Virus record (IMG/VR): IMGVR_UViG_3300037116_000299
Span: 124,001-188,000 of that record
Length of the DNA: 64,000 nucleotides
Direction: 5' to 3' (one strand)
Below the pieces are notes generated by a model. The model did no database searches and was not told where the DNA came from. It saw only the letters and a list, made by a program, of their open reading frames with translations. This document shows positions 3,690-30,132 of the stretch, piece by piece. The translations under genes were made by a program, and so were the position numbers. Each line of letters starts with the position of its first letter. Positions within the stretch are counted from its first letter, which is position 1.

Positions 3690-3932
3690 GGTGGTTCTCC
3701 TTTGTACGGGTTGGGGTTATTGATTAGGACCGGGTGGGCTCGAACCTAAGTCGAGGGTCACTCAGTACCACTGATTACCTGGTGTCTCTATCCCCAAACC
3801 TGTCCGCCCCTCGTGATGGCTCAAGGGACCTTTCCCACTCAGCGTGCGGTGAATACCCCACGTAATCGCCGCATGCCAGCCATCGCTCAAAAGCTGTCCA
3901 GGATGCAAACAGAAAAGGCCTCGCGTGTGGGC

Positions 3933-3962
3933 CTTTGGTAGTCGGGCGCCCTCCCTGACACT
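3933..3962 (+). promoter_or_regulatory. Class A putative phage promoter (CTTTGGTAG ... GACACT), probably leaderless
   Basis: Motif at 3933, NANNNT hexamer at +24, SD-less ATG at +36 (3969). Confidence 0.7.
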
Positions 3963-3968
3963 CGAGTT

Positions 3969-4298
3969 ATGAGCAAGGCAATCAAGCACGATCCCATCAG
4001 CACCAGCACGGCGAAGTTCAAACTGCGGGACACCTACGCACCGGGCAAGTTCGGCGTGTACCACGCCGATGGCGTCATCGTCAGCAGTCCGGTCATGCAG
4101 ATCGACGGCAAGTACGTGGCGATCTCCGATGAAATCTTCGTTGAAACCCATCGTCTGCTCTTCGACATCACCTCCCTGGGTACAGACGGACTGATGATCC
4201 AGGTCTACGAGAAGACGATGCCGGCAACCCTGTGGCAGCGCCTTCGGGCAGGCTGGCTTCGTCTCTTTGAACCGAGTGCTTGCCTGACGGGGTGCTGA
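3969..4298 (+). CDS. Hypothetical protein (109 aa)
   Basis: First gene of the rightward block; stop overlaps the next start (TGATG). Confidence 0.75.
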   Translation: MSKAIKHDPISTSTAKFKLRDTYAPGKFGVYHADGVIVSSPVMQIDGKYVAISDEIFVETHRLLFDITSLGTDGLMIQVYEKTMPATLWQRLRAGWLRLFEPSACLTGC

Positions 4299-7938: not shown

Positions 7939-8051
7939 TGCTCAATCGAATTCTCTGCTTCTTCGGACTGCATCGCTGGGTCCCGGCCGGTCCTTACATC
8001 GAGACTTGCCGCTGCTGTGGCGCGGTGCAAAACGTCTGGGTCCTCCTGTGA
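7935..8051 (+). CDS. Small Zn-finger-like phage protein (38 aa), not in ORF track
   Basis: ATGA overlap; LCFFGLHRW...TCRCCG (C-x4-H...C-x2-C). Confidence 0.6.
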   Translation: MMLNRILCFFGLHRWVPAGPYIETCRCCGAVQNVWVLL

Positions 8052-8941
8052 AGGAATGGACCCACGCCGATCTGGTAGCCCGGGCCGCCCGCTGGCTGTG
8101 GGGTACCTACGGCTGCAAGGCCGTGCTCACGGAGATGACCACTCACTCTGGCGAGATCCCTGACGTCATCGGCTGGAAGTTCAATGGACGCTCCGTCCTG
8201 GTCGAGTGCAAGACCAGCCGCGCCGACTTCAAAGCCGACGCCGACAAGCCCTTCCGCCAGAACCTGAACATCGCACTCGGCGCCGAACGCTACTACTTCG
8301 TGCCGGCGGGGCTGATCAAGCCGGAGGAGCTGCCGGCGGACTGGGGCCTGGCGGAACTGAAGGGCAACGGGGTCCACATCACCGTCCACGCCCGGCCGCG
8401 CAAGGACCTTCGTTCTGATGTAGCCCGCAACTACGAGATGCGCATGCTGGTCGCTGCCCTGGGCCGCACTGCCGCGCGTCTCCAGCCCATCCAGCTCAAC
8501 GACTGGCTGCGCTGGGAGAACCGGGAGCAGTCGCTCAACCAGATGCACGGCTGGGTCACCAAGGAAGATCACGAGGCCCACCTCTCCGCCCTGGCTGGCT
8601 GGGAGCAGGTTACCGATCCCAAGGATCTCCCGATCGACGACGTCACAGGTGAGGCCTGGTGTCCCAAGCATGAGCAGGCCTTCGCCGACTGTTGCTGCAT
8701 CGGCCCAGGCGAGCAGCATGTCCAGTACGAGGTGAAGAACGGCGTGCTGATGGCTTTTCCCATGGCGATGCACTGCTGCAAGTTCGAGCCCATCGAGTTG
8801 CGGGTAGCCCCGAGTCTCCGCATCGATGCCTGCGTTCTCCCGACGGACCAGGAGCGCTGGAGAGGCCGCAAGGACACGGAGTCCTTCATTCCAGGTCCCT
8901 CTTTGGTAGGCCTGTCCCTACAGGGGATTATTGCGGAGTGA
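8048..8941 (+). CDS. MmcB-like PD-(D/E)xK nuclease-domain protein with Cys-rich C-terminal extension (about 297 aa)
   Basis: EIPDVIGW...VLVECKTSRADFKAD.. and RYYFVP..LI...ELP..WGL pattern; GTG start overlapping the upstream stop. Confidence 0.7.
   Translation: MKEWTHADLVARAARWLWGTYGCKAVLTEMTTHSGEIPDVIGWKFNGRSVLVECKTSRADFKADADKPFRQNLNIALGAERYYFVPAGLIKPEELPADWGLAELKGNGVHITVHARPRKDLRSDVARNYEMRMLVAALGRTAARLQPIQLNDWLRWENREQSLNQMHGWVTKEDHEAHLSALAGWEQVTDPKDLPIDDVTGEAWCPKHEQAFADCCCIGPGEQHVQYEVKNGVLMAFPMAMHCCKFEPIELRVAPSLRIDACVLPTDQERWRGRKDTESFIPGPSLVGLSLQGIIAE
8901..8931 (+). promoter_or_regulatory. Class A putative phage promoter (CTTTGGTAG ... GATTAT)
   Basis: Motif in the last codons of the upstream gene; hexamer at +25; GGAGGG RBS and ATG 8969 downstream. 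Confidence 0.6.
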
Positions 8942-8968
8942 ATCGTAACTTTTCCGTTGGAGGGACCC

Positions 8969-9151
8969 ATGGCGACCGTCGTTTCCGTCAACCACATCGA
9001 TCTCTTTGACACCACACAGCTGGATGCGGAGTTCCGCGCCAGCAAGGAGCGTAAGAATGGCACCCAAAGCCGCACAGAAGAAGTCCCCAGCAGCTCAGAA
9101 GCTGGCCAAGCAGGGCGCACCAGTCACAGCACCGACCAAGCGGCAGGGTAA
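8969..9151 (+). CDS. Hypothetical protein (60 aa)
   Basis: GGAGGG RBS; overlaps the next ORF by about 95 nt. Confidence 0.5.
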   Translation: MATVVSVNHIDLFDTTQLDAEFRASKERKNGTQSRTEEVPSSSEAGQAGRTSHSTDQAAG

Positions 9152-9527
9152 GGCCGTCCTGGCGCCGGTGGTCCCGATCACCGTGAAGTCCCTGGTCAAG
9201 CCCCGTCCCGCTCCGATCCCACTGGCAGCCGCTCAGCCTCACCCTGATCCGTCCAGCATTGCCCGCAAGGCAATGCAGTTGCGTCAGCAGGTCGGAAAGA
9301 AGGTCGATGGCTACGGAGCACCGGCTCCAGTCATCCGCAAGGTCGCTGAGTATCTCATCCGCTTCGAAGATGGCACGGTGTTGCACGCAGTTGGACCGCA
9401 CGCCGACGTGCTCGTTCGTTTCACCGACGAGTGCAATTCGATCTGCCTCGCCGAGGGCAAGGCCTACTACGACGGCCCGGCCATGACGAAGTACACCCCC
9501 GAGGAGTGGGCGGCCCGGCAGCTGTAA
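9057..9527 (+). CDS. Hypothetical protein with basic low-complexity N-terminus (156 aa)
   Basis: Start placed at MAPKAAQKK behind AAGGAG; followed by a terminator. Confidence 0.7.
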   Translation: MAPKAAQKKSPAAQKLAKQGAPVTAPTKRQGKAVLAPVVPITVKSLVKPRPAPIPLAAAQPHPDPSSIARKAMQLRQQVGKKVDGYGAPAPVIRKVAEYLIRFEDGTVLHAVGPHADVLVRFTDECNSICLAEGKAYYDGPAMTKYTPEEWAARQL

Positions 9528-9545
9528 CACTCTTCCCGCACACTC

Positions 9546-9574
9546 AAGGCCCTGTCGCTCTGGCAGGGCCTTTC
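9546..9574 (+). terminator. Probable intrinsic terminator
   Basis: AAGGCCCTGTC / GGCAGGGCCTT stem followed by TCT. Confidence 0.55.
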
Positions 9575-9578
9575 TACT

Positions 9579-9965
9579 ATGCCAAGAGACATCACACCGC
9601 TTTATCAAGGCGCCTACGAGAAGACCTGTGGGCAGACCTGCGTCGCAATGGCCGCCGGCGTGTCCAGGGAGGCCGCGATCGCCGCCGTGGGCATGCCGGC
9701 AGGCACCTGGGGCGCCGACCTCAAGCGCGGGCTTGCCAAGCTCGGCATTCGTACCGGCAAGACGCGCACGCTGCGCCACAACGCGGGCGCACCCCAGTTC
9801 GGCATCGTCAACATCAACTACCGGGTCAACGGCCGCAAGGTGCGCCGCCCTGGCCACTGGCTGCTGGTGTGGGATGGGCTGATCTATGACCCGTTGCCCC
9901 CGGACCACGAGTGGCGCCCTCCGGGTGAGTTCATCTCCGGCTTCGACATCCTCGACATCGACTAG
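9579..9965 (+). CDS. Papain-fold C39-like cysteine peptidase (128 aa)
   Basis: Q-x5-CG..C..M nucleophile motif (QGAYEKTCGQTCVAM), GHW and IYDP catalytic His/Asp. Confidence 0.7.
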   Translation: MPRDITPLYQGAYEKTCGQTCVAMAAGVSREAAIAAVGMPAGTWGADLKRGLAKLGIRTGKTRTLRHNAGAPQFGIVNINYRVNGRKVRRPGHWLLVWDGLIYDPLPPDHEWRPPGEFISGFDILDID

Positions 9966-10151
9966 TTGGCGGAGGGAAGGGGGCCGCGCAACGGGGTTAG
10001 GAGGTTCGAGTGCCTACTGACTGTCAGTGGGTTCTCAATGATTGACCCGAGTACGTGGAACCTCTTAGATTCATGCCTATTCTGACTTAGTTGTGCCGTG
10101 AGTCTTTGACGGGTGTCCGGTAGGGTGTCATGCTCTTTCTACCTTCTTACA

Positions 10152-10255
10152 TTGAGTAGTGCTTAAAGACTTTAAGTAAGTCTTAACTATTGAGTACCTC
10201 TTAATCAGTCAGTACATCTCTACGTGATGTACTGCTTTTATTAAGTACCTCTAAA
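10152..10255. repeat. Four 15-bp imperfect palindromes TTRAG-TANNN-CTWAA in an AT-rich non-coding island
   Basis: Copies at 10152, 10172, 10190 and 10241; 10141-10260 is 35% GC by hand count. Confidence 0.75.
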
Positions 10256-10278
10256 GAGCGGGGTCCTCCCGCTCGATC

Positions 10279-10308
10279 CTTTGGTAGATCCAGACCATCC
10301 CGCATGCT
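10279..10308 (+). promoter_or_regulatory. Class A putative phage promoter (CTTTGGTAG ... CATGCT)
   Basis: Hexamer at +24; GAGGAG RBS and TTG 10349 downstream. Confidence 0.7.
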
Positions 10309-10348
10309 CAGTCATGTGGCCGGTCACCGGCTCCAGAGGAGAACTATC

Positions 10349-10675
10349 TTGACCACCCCAAACGATCTTTCCCGGCTGCTCGACGAGGACACCAAGTCCG
10401 AACCGCGCAACCACACCTGGCTGGTGAGCTTCACGGCGAAACTGCCCTCCGACCTGCTCCCTGCCGAAGAAGGCATCTGTCCGAACTGTGGCGAAGAGCA
10501 TGACCCCGAAGAGATGCGCATCGTCAACGATGAGGTCACCATTCTGGGCACCCTCGACGGCCAGGTCATCATCGACCGCGTGCGCGCCCGGGTCCTCGAT
10601 CCGGAGAACATTCCCGTCCTGACGGATTTCTGTTTGACCGGCTTGAAGCACCTGGCCATGGCGGAGGTGTACTAG
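10349..10675 (+). CDS. Hypothetical protein with CPNC motif (108 aa)
   Basis: TTG start behind GAGGAG, in frame with track ORF 10304. Confidence 0.7.
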   Translation: MTTPNDLSRLLDEDTKSEPRNHTWLVSFTAKLPSDLLPAEEGICPNCGEEHDPEEMRIVNDEVTILGTLDGQVIIDRVRARVLDPENIPVLTDFCLTGLKHLAMAEVY

Positions 10676-11055
10676 TGTCGACCGACCGTATCCTCGACCC
10701 CTCCCGCGAGCAGTTTGCCATCCGCGTGCCTGAAGGCGAGACCCGCATCGTCCTGGTCACGCCGGATGTGCCCTTGTTCTGCAACCACTGTCACGACACC
10801 GAAGCTCCTGAGTACCGCCTGCGGCGCGCCGCCGGCAAGTACATCGCCCTCTGCTTCAAGAACGGCGAGGGCTGCTGGGAGCGCACCACCGTTCCCCAGT
10901 GCGAGTACACCGACAACCAGGGTGTGCAGTGCCTGTTCGAGTCGGAATGGGAAGTTCGCTTCGGTAGTGACCAGCTGATGCGCACCAACCGCTGCGTTGC
11001 GCACGTGGGTCCCGCGCTGTGTGATGTCGGCGAGCACCGGGTCTTTCCGATCTAA
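10675..11055 (+). CDS. Cys-rich, probably Zn-binding protein (126 aa)
   Basis: CNHC plus six further Cys; TAGTG-coupled start. Confidence 0.7.
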   Translation: MSTDRILDPSREQFAIRVPEGETRIVLVTPDVPLFCNHCHDTEAPEYRLRRAAGKYIALCFKNGEGCWERTTVPQCEYTDNQGVQCLFESEWEVRFGSDQLMRTNRCVAHVGPALCDVGEHRVFPI

Positions 11056-11207
11056 GGGTTGGGCTCCTCCCGGACGTTCTGAGAGGCATCTCTCCCCAAT
11101 TTCCCCTTTGTCTTTCCCCCTGTTATTTGTACCTGCCTTTCAAGTACCGGGCGGGAGGAATAGCGCACCAGCGCTGACCTCCCGCTCCCAACCCCTAAGG
11201 AAAACCC

Positions 11208-11672
11208 GTGTCCCAAGATACGAACCTCGGCTATCGCTCCAACTTCCCACTCACCAAGATCCTCGATCGCCTCTATCTCGGCGGCTTTCAGGACGCTCTT
11301 AACCTGCGCGGCCAGAACCCGCTCGGCATCACCCACATCTGCAACTGCACCAGCGAGAAGCTGGATCTGCCTCGTGCCAAGTTCAACATCATCCAGATGG
11401 ACCAGCTGGACGGTCACGAGTGGCACACCCAGAAGCTCTACGGCGCGGTCGACTGGATCCACCAGGCCCTGCGGGGCGGCGGTAAGGTCCTGGTCCACTG
11501 TCATGCGGGTGCGAGCCGCTCCCCTACCCTGGTCGCCTGCTACCTCTACACCTGTGGCTTCGGCTTCTACGAGTCCCTCGATGAGCTGCGCAAACAACGG
11601 CCCATCATCAACCCGGCGCCGGCAATTGTGATCAGCGCCAAGCGGGCCTTTGGTATCACCCCTGTCGCATAG
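11208..11672 (+). CDS. Dual-specificity protein phosphatase (154 aa)
   Basis: LTKILDRLYLGG, GITHICNC, GGKVLVHCHAGASRS (HCxxGxxRS), RKQRPIINP. Confidence 0.9.
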   Translation: MSQDTNLGYRSNFPLTKILDRLYLGGFQDALNLRGQNPLGITHICNCTSEKLDLPRAKFNIIQMDQLDGHEWHTQKLYGAVDWIHQALRGGGKVLVHCHAGASRSPTLVACYLYTCGFGFYESLDELRKQRPIINPAPAIVISAKRAFGITPVA

Positions 11673-11678
11673 CACTCT
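11648..11678 (+). promoter_or_regulatory. Class A putative phage promoter variant (CTTTGGTAT ... CACTCT)
   Basis: In the last codons of the phosphatase gene; hexamer at +25; GGAGG RBS starts at +37. Confidence 0.45.
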
Positions 11679-11694
11679 GGCTCTGGAGGCACGA

Positions 11695-11979
11695 ATGAGT
11701 CAAGTAATTAGCAAGGGTACGATCGCCATCTGTTCCCGTGGCCGCAAGGGCCTCGTCACATCGGACGGCCAAGTTGAAGTCAGCTACGAGGATGGCACGA
11801 AAGGCATGGCCTGGACCGGCGTGCATCTTGGCCCGGCAGTCCTCGGGCAGCCCTGGTCGAGCCGCAAACCCACCGCGTTGCAGCAGACAACGTCGCGTCA
11901 GTATCGCGCCATGATGGCGTTGCTTGACCGGCACACCCGCAACCTGCAGCCGCTGAAGAGTGTGGCATGCCAGAAGTAG
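11695..11979 (+). CDS. Hypothetical protein (94 aa)
   Basis: Start placed at MSQVIS behind GGAGG; GQPWSSRKP motif. Confidence 0.7.
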   Translation: MSQVISKGTIAICSRGRKGLVTSDGQVEVSYEDGTKGMAWTGVHLGPAVLGQPWSSRKPTALQQTTSRQYRAMMALLDRHTRNLQPLKSVACQK

Positions 11980-12299
11980 GCCATCGCGAGATCGTTCACA
12001 CCATGCGCGATTGGCGGCGGATCGAGGTCTTCGAAGGCGATGAATGGTTCGCCGACAAGATCGTCCACCGCTACCGCGACATCCAGGAGAAACGGGTCAA
12101 CGGTGAGTGGGTTCTCGACAGCTCGAAGCTGTTGAAGCGGGTCACCGGCAGGTTCCTATGTGTCGGTGGTCCTCGCAATGGCGAGCGCCTGACCTTTGAG
12201 GAGTCCCGCAACACCAAGTACGTCTCCTTCAACTGCGCTGGCGATTACGGCCGGCGCGAAGGAATTCCCAAGTCTGTCTTTGCCTGGATCGAAAGGTAA
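11967..12299 (+). CDS. Hypothetical protein (110 aa)
   Basis: Short overlap with the upstream gene; phage-like CVGGPRNGE motif. Confidence 0.7.
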   Translation: MPEVGHREIVHTMRDWRRIEVFEGDEWFADKIVHRYRDIQEKRVNGEWVLDSSKLLKRVTGRFLCVGGPRNGERLTFEESRNTKYVSFNCAGDYGRREGIPKSVFAWIER

Positions 12300-12301
12300 T
12301 C

Positions 12302-12883
12302 ATGAGCGCCACCAAGATTGTGCCACTGGTCAAGAAGATGGACCGCTGGGAGAGCCACTTCATGCAGACGGCCATGCTGGCCGCGACTATGTCGGACGAC
12401 CGTTCCACCAAGGTGGGCTGCGTCATCGTGAAGGAAAACGCCATCCTGGCAAGCGGCTGCAACACCTTTCCCCGCGGCTGCTACGTGAACGGTGAGGACC
12501 TGGAACCTCATCTGCAGATGAGGGAGTACATGGTCTCGGGAATCATCAATCCGGAGTCTCGTGCCAGGATACTGGCCCCTATCGAGGCCCGCCACGACAA
12601 GCCCGCCAAGTACCTCTGGACCGAGCACGCCGAGCGCAACGCCATCTACGGTGTTGCCCGCCGCGGTGGACCGGCCTTGCAGGGCTCTGCCATCTATGTG
12701 CCCTGGTTCCCCTGCGCTGACTGTGCCCGGGCCATCATCCAGTCCGGCATCTCCCAGGTAGTTGCCTACATGCCCGGCTTCGATCACCCCAAGTACGGCC
12801 CGGATTTCAAGGTAGCCGTCCAGATGTTCCGGGAGAGCGGGGTTGATGTTCGCTATGTGGAACGTCTGGAAGCGGCCAAGTAA
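12302..12883 (+). CDS. dCMP deaminase-family protein (193 aa)
   Basis: STKVGCVIV, SGCN.FPRG, HAERNAI, PCADCARAIIQSGI. Confidence 0.92.
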   Translation: MSATKIVPLVKKMDRWESHFMQTAMLAATMSDDRSTKVGCVIVKENAILASGCNTFPRGCYVNGEDLEPHLQMREYMVSGIINPESRARILAPIEARHDKPAKYLWTEHAERNAIYGVARRGGPALQGSAIYVPWFPCADCARAIIQSGISQVVAYMPGFDHPKYGPDFKVAVQMFRESGVDVRYVERLEAAK

Positions 12884-28517: not shown

Positions 28518-28718
28518 GTGCCGCAGATCGTGATTACCCAGGGTCAGGCGTACCTGAAGGGAAACGGTCTGCGGTGCATGGCTCCCCGCTATGACGACGC
28601 CACCTGCAAGTGCAACACGCTGGTGGTGAAGAAGAACTCGGCCGGTGAACTATCCGGGGCCTTCCAATGCCCCGAACGCCGCTGCCGCCAACACATCGAG
28701 GTTGAGGTTCGGCCCTAA
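28518..28718 (+). CDS. Com-like Zn-ribbon protein (66 aa)
   Basis: CKCNTLVVK...FQCPERRCRQHIEV; GTG start behind GGAG. Confidence 0.55.
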   Translation: MPQIVITQGQAYLKGNGLRCMAPRYDDATCKCNTLVVKKNSAGELSGAFQCPERRCRQHIEVEVRP

Positions 28719-28803
28719 ACCGAACCCCTTCGTGAATCCAGCTCCACAAGAACACCCGCACGGTCCCGCGCGGACCAGCTCGCCCCAGGAGGGTATTTTC
28801 ACC

Positions 28804-30132
28804 ATGGCAAAGAATAAGCAGACACCGGAAGAGTTCCAGGCCGAGCTGAAGCTTCAGGACCGGTTCGCGACCATTTTCCGCAGCAATGGGTACGATCCCG
28901 AGACCGGCGACCCGATGGATATCAAGGACGCTCTGGATGTTCAGAACGCGGCCTTCATGATCCCCCGCGCGCTGACTCAGATCGTGCAGGAAGGCATCGA
29001 GCCGATGCTCATCGGCACGAACCTGCTCCAGAAGGTCCAGTACAAGCCTGGAATGACGACCGTATTCCCCGCCATCGAGCCGCTTCGCGCGGACGAAGCC
29101 GGCGACGGAATGGATCTGCCGATCTACAACATCAACATCGGTGGAGCACAGTCGTTCGGTGTGACGGTCAAGCGGCACGGTCTGCGTCTCAAGATCGCCA
29201 AGCGCTTCGTCGACGAGTCCAGCTACCCCTGGATCAACTTCTGGCTGCGCCTGGCCGGCAACGCTCTCGCCCGCCACAAGGAAGAGTACATCTTCGACTT
29301 CATCACGCGCCTCGGCACGGTTGTCTTCGACAACGACGTCAACGCACGTATGACGTCCAACACCGTCGGCCAGCCCATCAAGGGCGTCACCACGGGTCGC
29401 GACTACAAGGGCAAGCTGAACGGCTCCATGACGGTCGACGACATCTTCGATATGTACGCGGCTGTTCTCTTGAACGGTTTCGTGCCCGACACGATGCTGG
29501 TCCATCCAATGGCGTGGCTCATGTGGGTAAAGGATCCCGTGATCCGCGAGTTCGCGATCCAGGCGGGCGGCGGAAGCTTCTTCGCTCAGTGGACCGGAAA
29601 CCCGGCTGTCCAGGGCAACAAGTTCTACAACAACGGCGGCCTCGGCCTCGGTACCGGCCAGACCGGCCAGTACACCAACGGTCAGCTGACCGGTGGGGAA
29701 GTCTCCAACGCCACGTCCGGCAACTACCAGAACATGAGTTCGGCACCGCAGCTCCCCGGTTACCTCGGCCTGCCCTTCCGCATCCTGGTCTCGCCGTTCG
29801 TCAAGTTCGACCCCGAGGATCGCACGACCGACATCCTGATGTTCAACAGCCGCAACCTCGGCGCCTTGATCGTGGCTGAAGAGCCCCATGTCAAGAGCTG
29901 GGAAGATGGCCAGTTCAACATCCAGAACATGTCGATCGAAGAGACCTACGGCTTCGGCATCCTCAACGAAGGCCAGGCGATCGCGGTTGCCCGCAACATC
30001 AAGGTCCGCCCGAACGAGTTCACCATGCCGGCGCGCACCGTGTTCAACCTGTCGGAGGCGAACAACACCTTCACCGATCTGGCAACGGCAGCGATCTTCG
30101 ATGCGGCGAACCCGCTCAACGTCAACGCCTAA
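28804..30132 (+). CDS. Major capsid protein, HK97-fold (442 aa)
   Basis: Position; IPRALTQIVQEGIEP, VKRHGLRLKIAKRFVDES (backbone strand), LARHKEEYIF (spine helix), PDTMLVHPMAW, RILVSPFV, EETYGFGILN. Confidence 0.88.
   Translation: MAKNKQTPEEFQAELKLQDRFATIFRSNGYDPETGDPMDIKDALDVQNAAFMIPRALTQIVQEGIEPMLIGTNLLQKVQYKPGMTTVFPAIEPLRADEAGDGMDLPIYNINIGGAQSFGVTVKRHGLRLKIAKRFVDESSYPWINFWLRLAGNALARHKEEYIFDFITRLGTVVFDNDVNARMTSNTVGQPIKGVTTGRDYKGKLNGSMTVDDIFDMYAAVLLNGFVPDTMLVHPMAWLMWVKDPVIREFAIQAGGGSFFAQWTGNPAVQGNKFYNNGGLGLGTGQTGQYTNGQLTGGEVSNATSGNYQNMSSAPQLPGYLGLPFRILVSPFVKFDPEDRTTDILMFNSRNLGALIVAEEPHVKSWEDGQFNIQNMSIEETYGFGILNEGQAIAVARNIKVRPNEFTMPARTVFNLSEANNTFTDLATAAIFDAANPLNVNA

What the first reader, a model, noticed from the sequence alone, without database searches (positions are those of the whole stretch)
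10020..10260. AT-rich non-coding island with four 15-bp palindromic boxes: candidate origin or operator array
Seen: TTGAGTAGTGCTTAA (10152), TTAAGTAAGTCTTAA (10172), TTGAGTACCTCTTAA (10190) and TTAAGTACCTCTAAA (10241). A CAGTACATC/GATGTACTG inverted repeat lies between the last two. 10141-10260 is 35% GC in a high-GC genome and sits in the largest gene-free gap of the rightward block, just upstream of a class A promoter. Inference: binding sites for a dimeric protein, such as an initiator (iterons plus unwinding element), repressor, or partition/packaging factor.
Basis: partly seen in the sequence, partly recalled or inferred. Interest (0 to 1): 0.62.

Follow-up and report, generated by a model that had tools for sequence, protein, structure and literature searches.

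The report
Conserved palindrome array in jumbo prophage
The four boxes are real and unique in a ~214-kb temperate jumbo phage of peat Acidobacteriaceae, and they sit inside a short promoter-to-terminator unit that changes far less than the gene beside it, so this is a working control element, though sequence alone cannot say whether it is an operator array, a small RNA or a replication origin.

Summary
Four 15-bp boxes (10152, 10172, 10190, 10241) match TTRAGTANNNCTWAA. They occur nowhere else in the 214-kb record, and they lie in its most AT-rich 120 bp (32.5% GC).

- **Genome:** a temperate jumbo prophage of Acidobacteriaceae, distantly related to phage 0305phi8-36.
- **Conservation:** relatives with 84% identical capsid protein and a 47-50% identical neighbouring gene keep the whole ~380-bp module in the same order. 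It runs: promoter-like P2 (10104-10135), three boxes, hairpin plus T-run, fourth box, GC hairpin, class A promoter P3 (10279-10309), then the gene at 10349.
- **Relatives' boxes:** these are better palindromes, with half-site KTRAGTA.
it is an intrinsic terminator. Three of its nine stem pairs changed on both sides between clades and still pair.
- **Selection:** among 13-16 variants the core differs by 0.9%, against 11% in the adjacent gene.

My best reading (0.38) is an operator array for a phage-encoded dimer, embedded in a short transcription unit that gates the rightward operon. The rivals are a small RNA (0.27) and a transcription-activated origin (0.20). No raw reads were available, so termini, RNA ends and coverage remain untested.

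The parts
9971..9996 (+). G-rich block (GGAGGGAAGGGGG..AACGGGG) that opens the conserved module
   Evidence: Present at the same place in all clade B relatives, whatever gene lies upstream.
10034..10045 (+). Conserved CTCAATGNTTGA, an outward-facing pair of box half-sites
   Evidence: Shared by window and clade B. Function unknown.
10049..10068 (+). Box 0, a degenerate box with a stretched centre (GAGTAC-N8-CTCTTAG)
   Evidence: Read from the sequence. Clade B has a regular 15-bp box (TTGAGGTCTACTCAC) at the corresponding place, with only two rare variants among 16 sequences.
10104..10135 (+). P2, promoter-like CTTTGACG-N18-ATGCTC of class A type; predicted start near 10142
   Evidence: Found by the class A scan. 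Clade B has CTTTGACA-N18-ATGCTT. Among 16 variants the two hexamer regions never vary and only the spacer does. Promoter activity is inferred, not shown.
10152..10166 (+). Box 1, TTGAGTAGTGCTTAA
   Evidence: Counterpart in clade B is GTGAGTTTCACTCAA.
10172..10186 (+). Box 2, TTAAGTAAGTCTTAA
   Evidence: Counterpart in clade B is GTAAGTAWTACTTAC, a perfect palindrome; the outermost pair T-A became G-C.
10190..10204 (+). Box 3, TTGAGTACCTCTTAA
   Evidence: Counterpart in clade B is TTGAGTTTACACTTAA (16 nt).
10210..10242 (+). T1, a hairpin (9-bp stem, 7-nt loop) plus CTTTTATT: a + strand intrinsic terminator whose stem base carries the box core AGTA/TACT
   Evidence: Terminator scan. Hairpin energy is -12.0 kcal/mol here and -15.9 in clade B. 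Three of 9 pairs differ on both sides between clades and all still pair. A T-rich tail follows in both clades, and T1 never varies among 16 clade B variants.
10241..10255 (+). Box 4, TTAAGTACCTCTAAA
   Evidence: Counterpart in clade B is TTGAGTATTACTCAA, a perfect palindrome that never varies. The box 1 to box 4 start distance is 89 nt in both clades.
10256..10274 (+). T2, a GC-rich hairpin (GAGCGGG-GTCCT-CCCGCTC) directly before P3
   Evidence: Energy is -14.4 kcal/mol. Clade B has a hairpin of variable sequence at the same place (-6.5 to -14.4). The same hairpin-then-class-A arrangement is seen at 3933, 5521 and 7696.
10279..10309 (+).
   Evidence: Conserved in clade B, with variation only in the spacer. 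The exact motif occurs 5 times in the host MAG, all inside the prophage.
10318..10351 (+). 5' leader hairpin GGCCGGnnACCGGC, ribosome-binding site GAGGAG (10336-10341) and TTG start (10349)
   Evidence: Conserved between clades.
10349..10675 (+). Downstream gene: 108 aa, acidic, with a CxxC..H motif, function unknown. The module travels with it.
   Evidence: 47-50% identical in clade B. No Pfam or PHROG family. AF2 pLDDT 65 and no fold match.
9006..9527 (+). Upstream gene: 173 aa, basic, with a Lys/Ala/Pro-rich tail. A speculative candidate for the box-binding protein.
   Evidence: 41-47% identical homolog directly upstream of the module in G001. 26 K+R against 12 D+E. The model is poor, pLDDT 49. 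Binding is not shown.

Best explanation
The AT-rich island is the core of a ~380-bp, single-copy, phage-specific transcription-control module at the head of the rightward operon that begins at 10349. A class-A-type promoter (P2) fires into the island. Box 4, a second hairpin (T2) and the promoter P3 follow. I read the boxes (half-site KTRAGTA, five to six copies counting box 0 and the base of the T1 stem) as double-stranded DNA sites for a phage-encoded dimeric protein. Bound at about -84 and from +10 to +113 of P2, that protein would block or loop out P2, and together with T1 and T2 it would set how much transcription enters the operon. What is shown: the boxes, their uniqueness, their conservation and strong constraint, and the terminator with its compensatory changes. 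What is inferred: promoter activity of P2 and P3, protein binding, and the direction of regulation.
For: - **Uniqueness:** the boxes occur nowhere else in the 214-kb phage. They are not enriched in the 6.1-Mb host MAG, with 3 sites against 4 for the control pattern. The partner is therefore local and phage-specific.
- **Symmetry:** clade B boxes are perfect or near-perfect 7+1+7 palindromes.
- **Where variation falls:** within clade B, all variable sites in boxes a-c lie at box centres, outermost positions or spacers, never in the half-site cores. This is the usual pattern for dimer-binding sites.
- **Boxes outside the short transcript:** box 0 lies upstream of P2 and box 4/d lies after the T-run of T1, yet both are conserved, and box d never varies.
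- **Strength of constraint:** the core differs by 0.9%, against 11.3% in the adjacent gene and 18% at its third codon positions. The near-invariant block runs from just upstream of P2 to the end of box d, with variable DNA on both sides.
- **Promoters and terminator:** in P2 and P3 only the spacers vary. T1 is kept by three compensatory pairs.
- **Lifestyle:** the phage is temperate and encodes no recognisable sigma factor or single-subunit RNA polymerase. Its promoters are thus read by host polymerase and need control.
- **Accessory nature:** clade C has the gene and a class-A-like promoter but no array in the 565 nt available upstream, as expected of an accessory regulator.
Against: - No DNA-binding gene was identified next to the module. 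The 108-aa product is acidic, the neighbours have no HTH by Pfam, and both structure models are poor.
- The boxes do not overlap the -35 or -10 of either promoter. Box 4 sits at about -68 of P3 here and about -81 in clade B, so its phasing is not kept.
- In this phage the right half-sites are weak and all boxes point the same way.
- The three G:T departures from symmetry would pair only in + strand RNA. The + strand RNA folds 10 kcal/mol better than the - strand here and 7 better in clade B.
- Spacers are as conserved as the boxes within clade B, which a pure operator model does not require.
- If T1 is efficient, P2 makes only a short RNA, so it is unclear what a repressor of P2 would gain.
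Confidence: 0.38

Rival explanations
1. Small non-coding RNA gene or cis-acting leader. P2 to T1 (about 100 nt), or P2 to T2 (about 135 nt, which would include box 4), is the product. The boxes act as RNA hairpins, for example as a platform or decoy for an RNA-binding protein or as a cis antitermination or attenuation signal.
For: - A conserved promoter-like element, about 100 nt without an ORF, then an intrinsic terminator is the standard anatomy of an sRNA gene.
- The near-invariant block starts at the promoter and covers every base, spacers and T1 loop included, while the T2 stem varies as terminators do.
- G:T departures from symmetry are 3, against 0 of the A:C type.
- The + strand folds with z -5.2 and -5.8, against -1.5 and -4.7 for the - strand.
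- All boxes follow the direction of transcription.
Against: - Box 0 lies upstream of P2, and box 4 lies after the T-run of T1.
- The predicted long-range pairings differ between the two clades, and loop sequences are not conserved.
- There is no Rfam match.
- In the one RNA library with good coverage, the assembled contigs leave a hole at exactly 10095-10223. This is weak evidence, because short RNAs are lost in such libraries and only contigs were available.
Confidence: 0.27
2. Origin of replication. The boxes are iterons for a phage initiator, or the AT-rich DNA downstream of a promoter serves as a transcription-primed origin as in T7 and T4, with P2 supplying the activating or priming transcript.
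For: - The element is a single copy per genome and lies in the most AT-rich 120 bp of 214 kb.
- It has four to six repeated dyad sites over about 210 bp with a fixed overall length.
- A promoter points into the AT-rich DNA.
- The phage has its own Pol A, a Toprim primase protein, a RecD2 helicase and a ligase, so it could use such an origin.
- From my own knowledge, lambda ori likewise combines four dyad-symmetric iterons, AT-rich DNA and a palindrome.
Against: - GC skew does not change sign or slope across the site, although genes on both sides share one orientation. The only local extremum is at the strand switch near 4000.
- There is no DnaA or IHF site.
- There is no AT-rich stretch beyond the boxes themselves.
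- The replication genes lie 70-110 kb away.
- The array is absent from the corresponding locus in clade C.
- The bracketing terminators and the tandem promoter look like transcription control.
Confidence: 0.2
3. Packaging, terminus or partition site bound by a small terminase or a ParB-like protein.
For: It is a single-copy array of repeated sites upstream of the structural block. Relatives of the 0305phi8-36 type have fixed ends with a 6.5-kb terminal repeat.
Against: - The large ORF in the position of terminase lies about 8 kb downstream (18510), and the adjacent genes are not terminase.
- In 0305phi8-36 the repeat boundary lies at the strand switch, which corresponds to about 3700-3970 here, not to this site.
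- The phage appears to integrate, so a plasmid-type partition site is not expected.
- Only contigs, not raw reads, were available, so termini could not be mapped.
Confidence: 0.06
4. Sites for a global host regulator. Box 2 fits the TTAA-N7-TTAA CtrA box, and a LexA-type SOS box is another option.
For: Box 2 is an exact TTAA-N7-TTAA, and boxes 1, 3 and 4 miss it by one base.
Against: - The host is Acidobacteriaceae, and CtrA is alphaproteobacterial (my own knowledge).
- Clade B boxes are TTGA-N7-TCAA inverted repeats.
- The palindrome is not enriched in the host genome, with 3 sites against 4 for the control.
- The LexA box reported for Acidobacterium is GTTC-N7-GTTC (my recollection, not checked here).
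Confidence: 0.03
5. No function: an AT-rich remnant with chance repeats.
For: None beyond the fact that AT-rich DNA is repeat-prone.
Against: Shuffles never reproduce the family of boxes. The element is conserved across clades, with 0.9% divergence against 11% in the gene, and it shows compensatory changes.
Confidence: 0.02

Closest known systems
Tripartite operators of lambdoid phages (lambda OL/OR)
   Same: Three equal-length dyad-symmetric sites are packed 18-24 bp centre to centre, with AT-rich spacers. They lie between a terminated upstream unit and the promoter of an operon, in a temperate phage. Half-sites are conserved and centres are free.
   Different: The boxes do not overlap a -35 or -10. 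No repressor gene lies beside them. Extra sites lie about 100 bp upstream and after a terminator. The array sits in the transcribed leader of a promoter whose transcript is terminated.
Lambda ori (four dyad-symmetric iterons, AT-rich DNA, palindrome) and other iteron origins
   Same: The number, size and spacing of the repeats are similar. Both have the lowest local GC, a neighbouring palindrome, and transcription directed at the site.
   Different: The array is not inside or beside an initiator gene. There is no separate unwinding stretch and no skew signal. It is absent from one related clade at this locus.
Transcription-primed origins of T7 (promoters 1.1A/1.1B plus AT-rich DNA) and T4 (ori uvsY, ori 34)
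   Same: A phage promoter is followed at once by the most AT-rich DNA. The phage encodes a Pol A and a Toprim primase protein.
   Different: Those origins need no palindromic boxes and have no terminator in the AT-rich part. No phage RNA polymerase or sigma factor was found here.
Lambda pR'-tR' short transcript and nut/put antitermination sites
   Same: A promoter is followed by structured leader hairpins and then a terminator, ahead of a long operon.
   Different: No N- or Q-like gene was identified. There are four to five near-identical hairpins instead of boxA plus boxB. The operon has its own promoter (P3) after the terminators.
Type III toxin-antitoxin loci (ToxIN: promoter, RNA repeats, terminator, toxin gene)
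   Same: The order of promoter, repeats, terminator and gene is the same.
   Different: The repeats here have an 18-26 nt period, are not exact tandem units and are palindromic. The downstream protein is acidic, 108 aa, has no ToxN match and has its own promoter.

Membership tests
Repressor operator array (lambda-type) | Several equal-length dyad-symmetric sites with conserved half-sites and free centres | tested here: met
   Half-site is KTRAGTA, and variation falls only at centres, edges and spacers.
Repressor operator array (lambda-type) | Sites overlap the -35 or -10 of the controlled promoter | tested here: not met
   The boxes span about +10 to +63 of P2. Box 4 ends 24 bp before the -35 of P3.
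Repressor operator array (lambda-type) | Cognate DNA-binding protein encoded nearby | tested here: inconclusive
   No HTH or other DNA-binding family in the neighbours. HTH_3 genes lie only at genome 13, 64, 76 and 81 kb. A basic 173-aa protein lies upstream, but its model is poor.
Repressor operator array (lambda-type) | Protein binding to the sites | not testable with these tools
   Needs a gel-shift, footprint or pull-down.
Iteron-type replication origin | Three or more repeated initiator sites next to an AT-rich unwinding element | tested here: inconclusive
   The repeats and the lowest GC are present, but the AT-richness is that of the boxes themselves, with no separate unwinding stretch.
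Iteron-type replication origin | Strand-composition switch or coverage peak at the site | tested here: not met
   GC skew stays negative on both sides, with no extremum at 10.1 kb. Coverage could not be tested because only contigs were available.
Iteron-type replication origin | Located in or beside initiator or replication genes, with host-factor sites | tested here: not met
   Replication genes lie at genome 24-64 kb. No DnaA or IHF site.
Transcription-primed origin (T7/T4 type) | Phage promoter directly upstream of AT-rich DNA, and a phage replisome | tested here: met
   P2, the GC minimum, and Pol A and primase. The RNA-to-DNA transition cannot be tested here.
Intrinsic (Rho-independent) terminator, applied to T1 | GC-containing hairpin followed by a T-run on the transcribed strand, with the structure kept in relatives | tested here: met
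   Three of 9 pairs are compensated, a T-rich tail follows in both clades, and there is no T-run on the - strand.
Small RNA gene | Own promoter and terminator with a conserved body and no ORF | tested here: met
   The promoter is supported at motif level only.
Small RNA gene | A discrete transcript is detected, and one secondary structure is conserved | tested here: inconclusive
   RNA contigs leave a hole over 10095-10223 in X18, while one 151-nt piece spans 10159-10309 in X19. Predicted pairings differ between clades. No Rfam family.
Type III toxin-antitoxin | Exact tandem RNA repeats of about 34-45 nt and a ToxN-family toxin downstream | tested here: not met
   The period is 18-26 nt and the copies are not exact. 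The downstream protein has no Pfam family.
CtrA box array | TTAA-N7-TTAA sites in an alphaproteobacterial host | tested here: not met
   The host is Acidobacteriaceae, and the relatives' boxes are TTGA-N7-TCAA.
Terminase recognition site (pac/cos) | Site next to the terminase genes, with read starts at the site | tested here: inconclusive
   The putative terminase lies 8 kb away. No raw reads were available.

The most novel reading that the evidence does not exclude
P2 to T1/T2 encodes a new kind of phage non-coding RNA built from four to five near-identical AU-rich hairpins (stem UUGAG/CUYAA). It would act as a multivalent decoy or assembly platform for a host or phage nucleic-acid-binding protein during the lysogeny-to-lysis switch of a temperate jumbo phage of Acidobacteria. 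The same sequence would double as DNA sites, which would explain why every base is constrained.
Probability: 0.12. Interest if true: 0.7.

Novelty: new variant of a known kind. Interest (0 to 1): 0.45.

Why it matters
Acidobacteria are among the most abundant soil and peat bacteria, yet almost nothing is known about how their phages are regulated. Temperate jumbo phages are also rare. This module is the most AT-rich and one of the most strongly constrained non-coding elements in such a phage. It is compact, about 200 bp, it occurs once per genome, and it comes in two natural sequence versions. It therefore offers a direct handle for finding the cognate factor by DNA or RNA pull-down. It would also allow the phage's promoter class and its lysis-lysogeny or replication control to be defined, and reporters or vectors to be built for a hard-to-manipulate phylum.

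Tried and rejected
- **Close DNA relatives:** megablast of 9000-12000 against GenBank phages gave no match. Three IMG/VR contigs carrying the flanking genes have an identical intergenic region across the 421 nt aligned, so they are uninformative.
- **Two-box pattern search in IMG/VR:** it returned only those contigs plus unrelated AT-rich repeats. One 45%-GC contig (L042) has TATTGAGTACACCTTAA three times, but with a different dyad, so I judged it chance.
- **Upstream 128-aa gene:** its only distant homolog (P0002) lies in a contig with no synteny and no boxes.
- **Distant cousins:** G002 and G006 (capsid protein 61-70% identical, 37-41% GC) have no module, and G002 has a tRNA at that place.
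- **Sigma-70-like site at 10042-10071:** its -35 is not conserved in clade B, so I dropped it.
- **Terminal-repeat boundary by analogy with 0305phi8-36:** the boundary there lies at the strand switch, not at a site like this one.
- **CtrA and LexA ideas:** rejected on host identity and box form.
- **Other motifs:** no DnaA box, IHF site, extended -10 or G-quadruplex motif. No Rfam hit.
- **Anti-Shine-Dalgarno pairing:** boxes 3 and 4 could pair with the ribosome-binding site of the gene at 10349, but this is not conserved in clade B.
- **L133 as a natural recombinant keeping only box d:** it is an insertion-sequence insertion.
- **RNA and DNA runs:** all were contigs, with no starts, ends or usable depth.
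- **Structure models:** the 108-aa model (pLDDT 65) gave no fold match. The 173-aa model (pLDDT 49) was too poor to search.
- **MAFFT alignment of T1 between clades:** it misaligned the 3' arm, so I counted pairs by script instead.
- **Phage polymerase or sigma factor:** no sigma-70 family protein was found. The search for a single-subunit RNA polymerase also found nothing, but its control was silent, so that absence is weak.
- **Not used:** Complex prediction (there is no protein pair to test) and the large representative-protein search.

Full report
**Observation.** The pattern TTRAGTANNNCTWAA with up to one mismatch hits four times in the window, against 0.11 expected. It hits nowhere else in the 214,300-bp record that holds the window. 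Shuffling only the local AT-rich 125 bp never produced a four-member family of 15-mers in 2000 trials. The 120 bp at 10136-10255 have 32.5% GC, the lowest value in the whole genome; the next lowest is 39%. The inverted repeat at 10210-10234 is 9/9 complementary. It is followed by CTTTTATT and scores as an intrinsic terminator. It belongs to a small family also found at 3933, 5521, 30218 and 33066, often directly after a GC-rich hairpin.

**What the genome is.**
- The window is bases 124001-188000 of an IMG/VR provirus record.
- The major capsid protein (28645-30132) is 27-31% identical to those of the jumbo phages 0305phi8-36, Moorella MTATph1 and Acinetobacter ME3. Gene order around the putative terminase, portal and capsid genes parallels 0305phi8-36.
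- A relative with 81% identical capsid protein lies inside a 3.26-Mb contig of an uncultured Acidobacteriaceae MAG. The record has a tyrosine integrase next to a tRNA-Arg gene near its right end. The runs that hold the sequence are peat and permafrost metagenomes.
- It is therefore a temperate jumbo phage of Acidobacteriaceae.
- Its left arm is transcribed leftward and carries a Toprim primase protein, Pol A, RecA-like and RecD2 proteins, a ligase and ribonucleotide reductase. The right arm is transcribed rightward from a strand switch at about 3700-3970.
- No sigma-70 family protein was found. A search for a single-subunit RNA polymerase also found nothing, but its control was silent, so that absence is weak.

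**Relatives.** Near-identical contigs gave no information. Capsid-based searches found a graded series of relatives.

In clade B the capsid protein is 84% identical, the 108-aa gene 47-50%, and the next two genes 65-67%. Here the region upstream of the homolog of gene 10349 keeps the same parts in the same order:
- a G-rich block;
- CTCAATGNTTGA;
- a box 0;
- a promoter-like CTTTGAC(A/G)-N18-ATGCT(T/C), which I call P2;
- three boxes;
- a hairpin with a T-rich tail (T1);
- a fourth box;
- a GC-rich hairpin (T2);
- the class A promoter (P3);
- a leader hairpin, a ribosome-binding site and a TTG start.

The clade B boxes are GTGAGTTTCACTCAA, GTAAGTAWTACTTAC, TTGAGTTTACACTTAA and TTGAGTATTACTCAA. 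Two of them are perfect 7+1+7 palindromes. Each window box shares 9-12 of its 15 positions with its counterpart, while the spacers cannot be aligned. The distance from the start of box 1 to the start of box 4 is 89 nt in both clades, although the internal spacings differ.

The gene content just upstream of the module varies: 0.45, 2.4 or 6.3 kb of other genes in clade B, and a 128-aa gene here. The module therefore travels with the downstream gene.

Clade C (capsid protein 75% identical) has the gene and a class-A-like promoter, but no AT-rich array in the 565 nt available upstream. More distant, low-GC cousins have nothing comparable.

**Constraint.** Thirteen to sixteen clade B variants were compared, the number depending on the analysis.
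- The ~114-nt core (boxes a-c, T1, box d) differs by 0.9% on average. The adjacent 115-codon gene differs by 11.3%, with 18% at third positions and 7.7% at first and second positions.
- The column-by-column map shows a near-invariant block. It runs from about 15 nt upstream of the -35 of P2 to the end of box d, with variable DNA on both sides.
- Inside boxes a-c, the variable sites fall only at box centres, the outermost pair or the spacers.
- In P2 and P3 only the spacers vary.
- T1 never varies within clade B. Between clades it has changed at three of nine stem pairs, each time on both sides, with pairing preserved. A T-rich tail follows in both clades.

I therefore take T1 to be a real + strand terminator. 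P2 is a likely promoter, but it is supported only at motif level.

**DNA sites or RNA hairpins.**

For DNA sites:
- The half-site cores are conserved and the centres are free.
- The relatives have perfect palindromes.
- Box 0 and box 4/d lie outside the P2-to-T1 transcript and are still conserved.
- The palindrome is absent from the rest of the phage and is not enriched in the host genome.

For RNA:
- The anatomy is that of an sRNA gene.
- Conservation is uniform and includes the spacers.
- All boxes share one orientation.
- Three G:T departures from symmetry occur, against none of the A:C type.
- The + strand folds better than the - strand by 10 kcal/mol here and 7 in clade B.

Against a single conserved RNA fold, the predicted long-range pairings differ between the clades and Rfam has no match.

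RNA-library contigs are inconclusive. X18 covers 9548-10094 and 10224-10450 but leaves a hole over P2, boxes 1-3 and the 5' half of T1. X19 has one 151-nt piece across 10159-10309. A DNA run crosses the island in one contig (10020-11740).

**Origin and packaging readings.** A promoter pointing into the most AT-rich DNA of a phage with its own Pol A and primase resembles the T7 and T4 origins. Four dyad repeats plus a palindrome resemble lambda ori. Both resemblances rest on my own knowledge.

Several signs of an origin are missing:
- GC skew does not change across the site, although gene orientation is constant there.
- There is no DnaA or IHF site.
- There is no AT-rich stretch beyond the boxes.
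- The replication genes are far away.
- Clade C lacks the array at this locus.

A packaging or terminus role is unsupported. The putative terminase lies 8 kb downstream. In 0305phi8-36 the terminal-repeat boundary sits at the strand switch. Termini could not be mapped because no raw reads were served.

**Verdict.** The finding is real, non-random and functional.
- I rank first a transcription-control module in which the boxes are sites for a phage-encoded dimer, embedded in a short promoter-to-terminator unit (0.38).
- A small RNA or cis-acting leader comes second (0.27).
- A transcription-activated origin comes third (0.20).
- Packaging or partition (0.06), host-regulator sites (0.03) and no function (0.02) trail.

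The binding partner is unknown. The adjacent 108-aa protein is acidic and gave no fold match. A basic 173-aa protein encoded upstream is only a speculative candidate.

The element is a new variant of known kinds of phage control regions. Its interest lies in the host phylum, the temperate jumbo lifestyle, and how directly it could be tested.

Noticed in passing
whole record; window 28645-30132; genome 210504-211807: The record is a ~214-kb temperate jumbo phage of Acidobacteriaceae, distantly related to 0305phi8-36. It has a tyrosine integrase beside a tRNA-Arg(CCG) gene. A relative lies inside a 3.26-Mb MAG contig, and another lies in a 452-kb metagenome contig (L135).
   Followed up: partly
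window 3933, 5521, 7696, 10104, 10279, 30218, 33066: A promoter-like family, CTTTGGTA-N17-AYNCTC, is usually preceded directly by a GC-rich terminator-like hairpin. The exact motif occurs 5 times in the 6.1-Mb host MAG, all inside the prophage. The phage has no recognisable sigma factor or single-subunit RNA polymerase.
   Followed up: partly
window 7940-9965 and the corresponding stretch of L097-L099: The flank upstream of the module is a gene-insertion hot spot. Between the 173-aa gene and the module, relatives carry 0.45, 2.4 or 6.3 kb of different genes. The window has an MmcB-like nuclease gene (8006-8941) and a 128-aa gene (9579-9965) that those relatives lack.
   Followed up: partly
L133:44-1180 and 1290-1864: In one peat contig, a 378-aa ORF that I read from memory as an IS4/IS5-type transposase (no family scan was run) is inserted exactly between T1 and box d. 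The downstream gene is frameshifted, so this is a decaying copy of the prophage.
   Followed up: partly
genome 73-87 kb (outside the window; L014, L015): A gene-poor stretch of lower GC (46-53%) holds seven of the record's eight predicted tRNA genes, a doubtful tmRNA call, and HTH_3 genes on both strands at 76.2 and 81.5 kb. It is a candidate immunity region.
   Followed up: no
window 10000-10045: A short ORF (GTG 10010, 11 codons) with a strong AGGAGG site ends in the conserved CTCAATGATTGA. Clade B has an 8-codon ORF ending in the same frame at the same motif. This may be coincidence.
   Followed up: no
window 11208-11672 and 12302-12883: The operon headed by the module encodes a dual-specificity protein phosphatase (DSPc, E 2e-19) and a dCMP deaminase (E 6e-23).
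   Followed up: no
genome 1401-6437 (L011): The left end of the record carries restriction-modification-like genes: a T5orf172/ResIII helicase and Eco57I/MmeI-type methylases. They may belong to the phage or to the host flank.
   Followed up: no
window 9985-10019: The DNA contigs of run X8 break here, at the left edge of the conserved module. One metagenome contig (L119) starts at the equivalent point. This fits strain-level variation in what lies upstream.
   Followed up: no
L141:2340-2365; table 7: The end of contig G010 carries what looks like a cDNA-amplification adapter (recognised from memory). Two RNA contigs of X18 carry Illumina adapter tails. These are assembly artefacts, not biology.
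   Followed up: no
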